A stretch of 63,906 bases of DNA, the filler included, from Octopus bimaculoides (taxonomy: Eukaryota): the NCBI RefSeq assembly GCF_001194135.2. It is 7 parts of 7 records of this genome, joined end to end, with 100 filler letters (N's around TTAATTAATTAA, not from the genome) between each part and the next. Parts side by side here need not be neighbours in the genome. Positions count along the whole stretch, not along the records: positions 48,171 to 50,986 come from NW_026334785.1; 6 more parts are not named here. The stretch is one strand, 5' to 3'. The notes beneath the pieces were generated by a model that saw only the letters and a list, made by a program, of their open reading frames with translations, had not been told where the DNA came from and made no database searches. The position numbers and the translations under genes were made by a program. Shown piece after piece: positions 48,071-48,504 of the stretch (positions are counted from its first letter, which is position 1; every line of letters begins with the position of its first letter).

Positions 48071-48286
48071 NNNNNNNNNNNNNNNNNNNNNNNNNNNNNN
48101 NNNNNNNNNNNNNNTTAATTAATTAANNNNNNNNNNNNNNNNNNNNNNNNNNNNNNNNNNNNNNNNNNNNAAAATGTATAGATTCTCTCCATAACTTCAC
48201 CGCTATATATACTTCTCTGCAGACATCCATTCCACAGTGTGGTCTTTCCTCCCGAGGGCCAAGCTGTAATTGTTCTTCTCAACAAC

Positions 48287-48337
48287 ATGGCACCCACCCG
48301 CGACCCATGGTTGCTTGGCGCGACGATTCTTTGTATC
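48287..48337 (+). CDS. Probable first coding segment of a secreted or membrane protein (exon 48223-48337), encoding MAPTRDPWLLGATILCI
   Basis: Acceptor tatacttctctgcag|48223. ATG in aacaacATGG context at 48287 with no earlier ATG in the exon. 17 codons end at a phase-0 donor atc|gtaaga (48338). Confidence 0.7.
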
Positions 48338-48473
48338 GTAAGAATATTTCTCTCATTTCCATTCTAATTCTATCGTTTATTAATCCATTTTAAATTATAA
48401 TTAATTGCATTTTAAGTTAATTTCTTTCTCTCTATGTTTCATTCATTGATTATTGTTGTTTCTTCCTCCACAG

Positions 48474-48504
48474 GTCTCGGTGTTTATTCCAGTAATTACA
48501 AACG
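48474..48504 (+). CDS. 31-nt coding exon VSVFIPVITN+G, completing a signal-peptide-like segment
   Basis: Acceptor ttgttgtttcttcctccacag and donor acg|gtgagt. The phase-0 start matches the upstream exon across a 136-nt GT-AG intron. Ends in phase 1. Confidence 0.75.

What the first reader, a model, noticed from the sequence alone, without database searches (positions are those of the whole stretch)
48223..48504. Hidden gene start: signal-peptide-like N-terminus split over two small exons
Seen: two + strand exons with strong splice sites join in phase 0 to give MAPTRDPWLLGATILCIVSVFIPVITN+G. This has a short n-region, a hydrophobic core and a possible T-N-G/A cleavage site. Known: a phase-1 intron right after the signal peptide is typical of modular secreted and cell-surface proteins. 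Inference: this is the 5' end of an unidentified secreted or membrane protein gene that the ORF track missed. No convincing phase-1 next exon was found up to 63906, so it lies in a gap or beyond the window. The frame is also open upstream of the ATG, so an internal hydrophobic segment is possible.
Basis: partly seen in the sequence, partly recalled or inferred. Interest (0 to 1): 0.7.

Follow-up and report, generated by a model that had tools for sequence, protein, structure and literature searches.

The report
Possible unannotated gene start, unproven
Two short, well-bounded exon-like segments could encode the hydrophobic N-terminus of a secreted or membrane protein, but nothing outside this sequence confirms it, and it would be an ordinary gene start if real.

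Summary
The sequence observation is correct to the base. Exon 1 (48223-48337) and exon 2 (48474-48504) are separated by a 136-nt AT-rich GT-AG intron. From the ATG at 48287 they join in frame to give MAPTRDPWLLGATILCIV|SVFIPVITN plus one base (G) of a split codon, a phase-1 end.

Exon 2 is bounded by the best acceptor and best donor of the piece. Exon 1 is a GC/CpG-rich island (52-58% GC) against a 24% GC intron. Composition-preserving shuffles almost never reproduce the arrangement.

The ATG is the first in the exon and has a good initiation context (A at -3, G at +4). The peptide has a 15-20 residue hydrophobic core (Kyte-Doolittle 19-window 2.32).

Every external test came back empty: two protein collections, Pfam, three contig collections and full-text literature. 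A repeat-derived control query also found nothing, so these negatives say little. No phase-1 next exon exists in the piece.

My best reading (about 0.4) is a real 5' coding end of an unannotated gene, encoding a signal peptide or signal anchor. The rivals are a chance pseudo-exon (about 0.33), internal transmembrane-coding exons (about 0.15), and real exons that are non-coding or read in the other open frame (about 0.08). It is ordinary if true, so interest is low.

The parts
48204..48211 (+). TATATATA motif, a possible TATA box. It lies 25 nt upstream of an initiator-like CCATTCC (A at 48229). This is a weak hint only.
   Evidence: this is the only TATAWAW in the first known stretch, but there are 22 on the + strand of the piece, mostly inside TA microsatellites. 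It is therefore not specific. Only 33 nt of sequence lie upstream of it (the piece starts at 48171).
48203..48222 (+). Acceptor-like site (cttctctgcag|A) in front of exon 1. If it is used, exon 1 is not the first exon of the transcript.
   Evidence: 6.4 bits, rank 6 of 219 AG sites on both strands.
48223..48337 (+). Candidate exon 1 (115 nt). 48223-48286 is either 5' UTR or an open upstream frame. From 48287 it codes for MAPTRDPWLLGATILCIV.
   Evidence: GC is 0.48 before the ATG and 0.59 after it, with CpG observed/expected 1.15, against 0.24 GC in the intron.
48287..48289 (+). Candidate start codon in an AACATGG context (A at -3, G at +4). It is the first ATG after 48223.
   Evidence: The only upstream ATG (48174) lies outside the exon and is out of frame.
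48338..48473 (+). Candidate phase-0 GT-AG intron of 136 nt. It is AT-rich and T-rich on this strand, and contains a 22-nt tandem duplication at 48379-48419.
   Evidence: Donor ATC|gtaaga scores 3.9 bits. GC is 0.24. Branch-point-like TTCAT/TTCAT/TTGAT lie 32/28/24 nt from the acceptor, and 77% of the bases before the AG are pyrimidines. Tandem repeat. If the intron is retained, a stop follows after 8 more codons (MAPTRDPWLLGATILCIVRIFLSFPF*).
48474..48504 (+). Candidate exon 2 (31 nt), coding SVFIPVITN plus the first base (G) of a split codon.
   Evidence: It is bounded by the top-scoring acceptor (14.8 bits) and top-scoring donor (11.4 bits) of the whole piece, both strands.
48505..48630 (+). 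Start of the candidate phase-1 intron (gtgagt...). It runs into (ACAAAC)n and (TCCA)n microsatellites and then an N gap.
   Evidence: No phase-1 exon with both an acceptor and a usable donor follows in the piece.

Best explanation
These are the first coding exons of a real, unannotated protein-coding gene on the + strand.

Proposed mechanism: translation starts at ATG 48287. Removing the 136-nt phase-0 intron joins the two halves of one hydrophobic segment. The resulting N-terminus is MAPTRDP-WLLGATILCIVSVFI-PVITN-(G/A/V/D/E). It would be recognised co-translationally as an ER-targeting signal. That signal would be either a cleavable signal peptide (cut near residue 26-28) or, given its length, an uncleaved signal anchor. 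The phase-1 intron that follows leads to the exon encoding the start of the mature or luminal part, which lies in an assembly gap or beyond the piece.

Shown: the sequence anatomy, the site scores, the composition contrast and the improbability of the arrangement by chance. Inferred: that the exons are transcribed and spliced, that the ATG is used, and that the peptide targets the ER. Transcription may start just upstream (TATA-like 48204) or in an upstream non-coding exon spliced to 48223. The data do not decide between these.
For: - The anatomy is exact.
- Exon 2 is flanked by the best acceptor and best donor of the piece, and the 48223 acceptor ranks 6 of 219.
- Exon 1 is a GC/CpG-rich island with sharp edges, 0.52-0.58 GC against 0.17-0.25 in the intron.
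- The intron has a pyrimidine tract and branch-point-like motifs at 24-32 nt.
- The ATG is the first in the exon and sits in AACATGG.
- One hydrophobic segment continues in frame across the junction: Kyte-Doolittle 19-window 2.32, 20 uncharged residues.
- Pro23 could open a c-region. Thr26 would be at -3 if cleavage follows residue 28, whose codon begins with G.
- A phase-1 intron at codon 28 matches the reported excess of phase-1 introns near signal-peptide cleavage sites in animal genes (PMC1626468).
- Chance controls: 0 full structures in 68.4 Mb of Markov sequence, and 2 in about 258,000 composition-preserving shuffles.
- The exon region shares nothing with the repeats elsewhere in the piece.
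Against: - There is no independent evidence of any kind.
- No protein in the 5.8-billion-cluster or 1.84-billion-representative collections matches. The only HMMER hits are repeat proteins, whose scores I judged to be chance matches built up over multiple repeat units.
- There is no Pfam match, no contig match and no mention in the literature.
- If annotated proteomes of this organism are in those collections, the exons are unannotated in every frame.
- No downstream phase-1 exon is present in the 1.7 kb of known sequence that follows.
- Donor 48338 is only moderate.
- A second frame is also open.
- The n-region has zero net side-chain charge, and the hydrophobic stretch is long and rich in Ile/Val, which is atypical for a cleaved signal peptide.
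- The thresholds in the chance tests were chosen after seeing the data, and real genomes are more heterogeneous than the null models.
Confidence: 0.4

Rival explanations
1. Chance pseudo-exons. An unexpressed GC-richer patch in non-coding, repeat-rich DNA happens to carry an ATG, splice-site-like motifs and T-rich codons that translate as hydrophobic residues.
For: - All external searches were empty.
- There is no following exon.
- The piece is otherwise SINE copies, microsatellites and assembly gaps.
- Two of three frames are open, so openness carries little weight.
- Donor 48338 is mediocre.
- The finding was picked by eye from a large scan, so some such coincidences are expected genome-wide. 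T-rich sequence readily gives NTN (hydrophobic) codons.
Against: - The best acceptor and best donor of the piece sit 31 nt apart in the right order.
- GC/CpG boundaries coincide with the proposed splice sites.
- The full structure is almost never regenerated by nulls that keep local composition: about 1e-5 per shuffle at strict thresholds and 6e-4 at relaxed ones. It appeared 0 times in 68.4 Mb of Markov sequence.
Confidence: 0.33
2. Internal exons of a larger membrane-protein gene. Exon 1 is entered through the 48223 acceptor in phase 2. HPFHSVVFPPEGQAVIVLLNNMAPTRDP is then a juxtamembrane stretch, WLLGATILCIVSVFIPVIT is a transmembrane helix split by a phase-0 intron, and Met at 48287 is an ordinary internal residue.
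For: - The acceptor-like site at 48223 ranks 6 of 219.
- The frame is open for all 21 codons between the acceptor and the ATG.
- The hydrophobic segment has transmembrane length and composition: 19-20 residues, Kyte-Doolittle 2.32, seven Ile/Val.
- From my own knowledge, transmembrane segments far outnumber signal peptides in any metazoan proteome.
Against: - By my estimate from base composition, an open 21-codon frame is expected by chance about one time in three.
- The Met lies exactly 7 residues before the hydrophobic core, in a favourable initiation context, and is the first ATG of the exon. That is required under the gene-start reading but is a coincidence here.
- GC and CpG content rise at the ATG rather than at the acceptor: 0.48 GC and CpG o/e 0.29 before it, 0.59 and 1.15 after it.
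- The acceptor is equally compatible with a non-coding upstream exon.
- No homologue was found for the 49-residue peptide in 1.84 billion representatives.
Confidence: 0.15
3. Real spliced exons that do not encode this peptide. They could be exons of a non-coding RNA or of a UTR, or coding in the other open frame (…SSQQHGTHPRPMVAWRDDSLY|RLGVYSSNYK).
For: Frame 0 is open across both exons and has its own ATG at 48307. The splice-site and composition evidence does not depend on the frame.
Against: - The frame-0 peptide is polar, low in complexity and featureless: Kyte-Doolittle maximum -0.27, and only a sub-threshold Pfam hit (E 0.038, 14.5 bits against a cut-off of 27).
- Its ATG has a weaker context (C at -3).
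- It had no database match when included in the concatenated query.
- The in-frame continuity of one hydrophobic segment across the junction favours frame 1.
Confidence: 0.08

Closest known systems
Eukaryotic cleavable secretory signal peptide (n-h-c architecture) followed by a phase-1 intron near the cleavage site
   Same: - An initiator Met, a short n-region with Arg, and a hydrophobic core.
- Pro23 as a possible c-region opener, and a small residue (Thr26) at -3 if cleavage follows residue 28.
- The split codon starts with G, so Gly or Ala is possible at -1.
- The phase-1 intron sits at codon 28, where phase-1 introns are over-represented in animal genes with signal peptides (PMC1626468).
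   Different: - The n-region has no net side-chain charge (R5 and D6).
- The uncharged stretch is up to 20 residues and rich in Ile/Val, at or beyond the usual h-region length.
- The signal is itself split by a phase-0 intron.
- No mature protein is in hand, and no predictor such as SignalP was run.
Signal-anchor or single-pass transmembrane helix
   Same: The 19-20 residue uncharged segment has a Kyte-Doolittle 19-window mean of 2.32, well above the customary 1.6 threshold. Its composition is rich in beta-branched residues.
   Different: Flanking charges are known on one side only, so topology cannot be inferred. If the segment is N-terminal it would be a type II or type III anchor. If it is internal, the Met and its context are coincidental.
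Pseudo-exons: intronic or intergenic sequence with splice-site-like motifs that is not spliced into mRNA
   Same: The setting is repeat-rich. There is no next exon, no homologue and no annotation in any frame.
   Different: The site quality, the coincident composition boundaries and the in-frame hydrophobic continuity exceed what the shuffles and simulations produce.

Membership tests
U2-type GT-AG spliced exons | GT at the 5' end and AG at the 3' end of the intron, with consensus-like flanks | tested here: met
   48338 gtaaga ... 48473 cacag, and 48505 gtgagt. Position-weight-matrix ranks: acceptor 48474 is 1st of 219, donor 48505 is 1st of 256, donor 48338 is 32nd of 256.
U2-type GT-AG spliced exons | Pyrimidine tract and branch-point motif 18-40 nt upstream of the acceptor | tested here: met
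   77% of the bases before 48474 are pyrimidines. TTCAT/TTCAT/TTGAT have their A at 32/28/24 nt from the acceptor. These motifs are short and common in AT-rich DNA.
U2-type GT-AG spliced exons | Spliced transcripts exist across the junction | not testable with these tools
   No transcriptome or genome of the source organism is reachable. Protein, contig and literature searches were empty.
Cleavable secretory signal peptide | Located at the N-terminus, starting at the initiator Met | tested here: inconclusive
   It is the first ATG of the exon and has an AACATGG context. However, the frame is open upstream to an acceptor-like site, so an internal position is not excluded.
Cleavable secretory signal peptide | Positively charged n-region | tested here: inconclusive
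   In MAPTRDP, Arg5 is offset by Asp6, so the net side-chain charge is 0.
Cleavable secretory signal peptide | Hydrophobic h-region of about 7-15 residues | tested here: inconclusive
   The h-region is 15 residues (W8-I22) if Pro23 opens the c-region. But the uncharged run is 20 residues with a Kyte-Doolittle 19-window of 2.32, which is transmembrane-like.
Cleavable secretory signal peptide | c-region with small uncharged residues at -3 and -1 | tested here: inconclusive
   With ...PVITN + G-- and cleavage after residue 28, -3 is Thr. Position -1 is Gly/Ala/Val/Asp/Glu, depending on two bases of an exon that is not in the piece.
Cleavable secretory signal peptide | Followed by a mature polypeptide | tested here: not met
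   No phase-1 exon with an acceptor, an open frame and a donor lies in 48505-50986. However, 619 of those bases are N.
Transmembrane helix / signal anchor | About 19 or more consecutive apolar residues with mean hydropathy above about 1.6 | tested here: met
   WLLGATILCIVSVFIPVIT has a Kyte-Doolittle mean of 2.32.
Any known protein family | Significant sequence similarity | tested here: not met
   - Pfam: best hit E 0.098, below the cut-off.
- Word-indexed search: no candidates.
- HMMER against 1.84 billion representatives: three hits to repeat proteins (E 7e-6 to 3e-4, 10/3/2 matched stretches) that I judged to be chance.

The most novel reading that the evidence does not exclude
The exons begin an orphan, lineage-restricted gene for a small secreted or membrane protein. 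The gene would be absent from all public protein collections searched and would have been missed because the draft assembly breaks it at microsatellite gaps.
Probability: 0.3. Interest if true: 0.25.

Novelty: new member of a known kind. Interest (0 to 1): 0.12.

Why it matters
If real, this adds one unannotated secreted or membrane protein gene to a fragmented draft genome. It would also show that short, intron-split first exons escape ORF-based tracks. That helps annotation quality but opens no new biological question. The mechanism (ER targeting by an N-terminal hydrophobic signal, with a phase-1 intron after it) is textbook. If it is not real, it is a good example of how convincing a pseudo-exon can look from sequence alone.

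Tried and rejected
**Searches that found nothing**

- The 49-aa peptide against the 5.8-billion-cluster protein collection gave no word-sharing candidate.
- HMMER of the same peptide against 1.84 billion representatives gave only three bacterial-type repeat proteins. I rejected them as chance hits whose scores build up over multiple repeat units.
- Pfam on both open frames and four other ORFs gave nothing above the cut-offs.
- A 56-aa ORF from the SINE, used as a control to see whether the collection holds anything from this organism's non-coding DNA, also gave no hit. The negatives are therefore uncalibrated.
- One concatenated 1189-aa query held all long six-frame open stretches of the piece, including frame 0 and the minus strand of exon 1. 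It produced 4682 word candidates, none at E <= 0.01.
- Exact-product look-ups of the 73-aa and 42-aa ORFs were not on record.
- A degenerate back-translation of MAPTRDPWLLGATILCI found nothing in the metagenome, viral or prokaryote-genome contigs.
- A 29-mer from the SINE found nothing in metagenome contigs.
- A full-text literature search for peptide and DNA strings found nothing.

**Ideas tested and dropped**

- Exon 1 as a fragment of the repeats elsewhere in the piece: the only shared string is a 10-nt CACCCACCCG.
- Genes on the minus strand over the same bases: no matching splice-site arrangement and no homologues.
- Rfam and ARAGORN: no tRNA. The sub-threshold mir-297/466/3149 hits all lie on CA/TA low-complexity tracts.
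- A next exon in phase 1: twelve acceptor-like sites were examined and none was convincing. The one in the SINE (49704) and the one at 50739 have no good donor.

Full report
**What the piece is.** The piece (48171-50986) holds only 2,197 known bases in four stretches: 48171-48630, 48766-48882, 49087-49986 and 50267-50986. They are separated by runs of N. The finding lies wholly in the first stretch.

**Checking the observation.** The sequence is exactly as described.
- A pyrimidine-rich acceptor-like site (cttctctgcag|ACA) precedes 48223.
- An ATG lies at 48287-48289.
- The frame runs to ATC|gtaaga (donor, first intron base 48338, phase 0).
- After 136 nt comes ttgttgtttcttcctccacag|GTC (first exon base 48474).
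- Then 31 nt lead to ACG|gtgagt (first intron base 48505, phase 1).
- The joined product is MAPTRDPWLLGATILCIV-SVFIPVITN plus one base, G.

That final G is a nucleotide, so residue 28 may be Gly, Ala, Val, Asp or Glu. The frame is open upstream to 48182, giving HPFHSVVFPPEGQAVIVLLNN between the acceptor and the Met. A second frame is also open through both exons (…PRPMVAWRDDSLY|RLGVYSSNYK, with its own ATG at 48307).

**Strength of the signals.** I ranked every GT and AG on both strands of the piece with a crude metazoan splice-site matrix. The matrix comes from my own approximate consensus frequencies and was used only for ranking.
- Acceptor 48474 is the best of 219 (14.8 bits; the next best scores 9.1).
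- Donor 48505 is the best of 256 (11.4 bits).
- Acceptor 48223 ranks 6th (6.4 bits).
- Donor 48338 ranks only 32nd (3.9 bits), because its exon side is ATC.

The intron has 77% pyrimidines before its AG and TTCAT/TTGAT motifs 24-32 nt upstream.

Composition changes sharply at the proposed boundaries. In 60-nt windows GC is 0.52-0.58 across exon 1 and 0.17-0.25 in the intron. By segment, the figures are as follows.

| Segment | GC | CpG |
|---|---|---|
| Exon 1 before the ATG | 0.48 | observed/expected 0.29 |
| Exon 1 after the ATG | 0.59 | five CpGs, observed/expected 1.15 |
| Intron | 0.24 | |

**Chance.**
- In 68.4 Mb of order-1 Markov sequence trained on the piece, 93 structures reached comparable scores. 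A structure here means an ATG-initiated open frame, a donor, a 50-1000 nt intron, an acceptor of at least 12 bits, an exon, a donor of at least 9 bits, and an open frame throughout. None also had a Kyte-Doolittle 19-window of at least 2.0.
- Block shuffles (10, 20 or 40 nt) of 48171-48630 keep the GC island and the T-rich tract in place. They gave the full structure in 2 of about 258,000 shuffles at strict thresholds, and about 6e-4 per shuffle at relaxed thresholds.

I set the thresholds after seeing the data, and real genomes are lumpier than these nulls. The arrangement is still clearly more than local composition would give.

**Translation start and peptide.**
- ATG 48287 is the first ATG after 48223 and sits in AACATGG (A at -3, G at +4).
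- The peptide has a 20-residue uncharged run (PWLLGATILCIVSVFIPVIT). Its Kyte-Doolittle 19-window maximum is 2.32.
- Read as a signal peptide, it divides into n = MAPTRDP, h = WLLGATILCIVSVFI (15 residues) and c = PVITN + residue 28. Thr is then at -3 if cleavage follows residue 28.
- The phase-1 intron at codon 28 falls where phase-1 introns are reported to be over-represented in animal genes with signal peptides. The suggested reason is Gly codons near the cleavage site (PMC1626468).

Against a cleaved signal:
- The n-region has no net side-chain charge (R5, D6).
- The apolar stretch is long and rich in Ile/Val, as in membrane anchors.

I could not run a trained predictor. A TATATATA at 48204 lies 25 nt upstream of an initiator-like CCATTCC (A at 48229). 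However, TATAWAW occurs 22 times on this strand, mostly in microsatellites, so I treat it only as a hint.

**Gene start or internal exon?** Only the open upstream frame favours the internal reading, and by my estimate that has roughly a one-in-three chance for 21 codons at this composition. The acceptor-like site at 48223 fits equally well with an ATG in a second exon behind a non-coding first exon. Transmembrane helices are also common. For the start reading, three things would have to be coincidences if the exon were internal:
- the Met sits 7 residues before the hydrophobic core;
- it is the first ATG and has a good initiation context;
- GC and CpG rise at the ATG rather than at the acceptor.

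I weigh the start reading over the internal reading at roughly 3:1.

**External evidence: none.**
- The 49-residue peptide found no word-sharing candidate among 5.8 billion protein clusters.
- HMMER against 1.84 billion representatives returned only three long repeat proteins (E 7e-6 to 3e-4, up to 10 matched stretches), which I reject as chance.
- Pfam gave nothing above its cut-offs for either open frame or for other ORFs.
- A single 1,189-residue query concatenated every long open stretch of the piece in six frames, including frame 0 and the minus strand under exon 1. It gave 4,682 word candidates and no hit at E <= 0.01.
- Exact-product look-ups failed.
- A degenerate back-translation of the first 17 codons matched nothing in metagenome, viral or prokaryotic contigs.
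- No paper contains the peptide or DNA strings.

A control query from the abundant SINE in the piece also found nothing, in proteins or in metagenome contigs. I therefore cannot tell whether these collections contain anything from the source organism, and the negatives weigh little. They do show that the peptide belongs to no widely conserved family. A signal or anchor sequence would be expected to lack such relatives, but so would non-coding DNA.

**Surroundings.** No convincing phase-1 exon follows within the piece. Twelve acceptor-like sites were read in the required phase, and none combines a good acceptor, a reasonable open frame and a donor. About a quarter of the downstream span is N. 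The rest consists of:
- microsatellites;
- a tRNA-derived SINE on the minus strand, 49925 to about 49700;
- two degenerate tRNA-like SINE heads on the + strand, 50470-50760.

The exon region shares only a 10-nt string with these repeats. I could not test this.

| Reading | Confidence |
|---|---|
| Real 5' coding end encoding a signal peptide or signal anchor | about 0.40 |
| Chance pseudo-exons | about 0.33 |
| Internal transmembrane-coding exons | about 0.15 |
| Real exons that are non-coding or read in frame 0 | about 0.08 |

Even if true, it is an ordinary gene start that adds one gene model to a draft genome, so interest is low.

Noticed in passing
window 49700-49925, minus strand: A tRNA-derived SINE copy. 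Its head is GGCGTGTAGCTTAGTGGTTCGGG, with an A box (TAGCTTAGTGG) and a B-box-like GGTTTCGATTC about 40 nt later, followed by a roughly 150-nt body. It ends next to an A/T-rich tract and is flanked by (ATAC)n. ARAGORN and Rfam do not call it a tRNA. It found no match in the protein or metagenome collections.
   Followed up: partly
window 50470-50760, plus strand: Two adjacent degenerate tRNA-like or SINE-head units share CAGATGyC...CTnTGAGTTCAAmTCCT (B-box-like). From memory they resemble the abundant octopus SINE, but I did not test this.
   Followed up: partly
window 48536-48630, 48849-48882, 49933-49986, 50960-50986: All but one of the known-sequence ends that border an N run stop in or beside a microsatellite: (ACAAAC)n and (TCCA)n, CATATGCATA x2, (ATAC)n, (AT)n. 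The N runs therefore look like assembly breaks at simple repeats. The sub-threshold Rfam hits to mir-297, mir-466 and mir-3149 all fall on these tracts and are low-complexity artefacts.
   Followed up: yes
window 49087-49521, minus strand: A stop-free stretch of 145 codons runs into the N gap at 49086. It has no Pfam match and no homologue in the concatenated search. Most likely it is open by chance.
   Followed up: partly
window 48379-48419: The candidate intron contains a 22-nt unit (ATTAATTCCATTTTAAATTATA) repeated 1.9 times in tandem at 85% match.
   Followed up: no
window 48450-48629, plus strand: If the 48505 donor is ignored, the frame of exon 2 stays open through the microsatellites to the gap (…VITNGEFLVPIYFPLQTYNTNTNTLIHEQWMDVHTHCSIHPFILPS). 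The stretch is built from simple repeats, so it is probably not coding.
   Followed up: no
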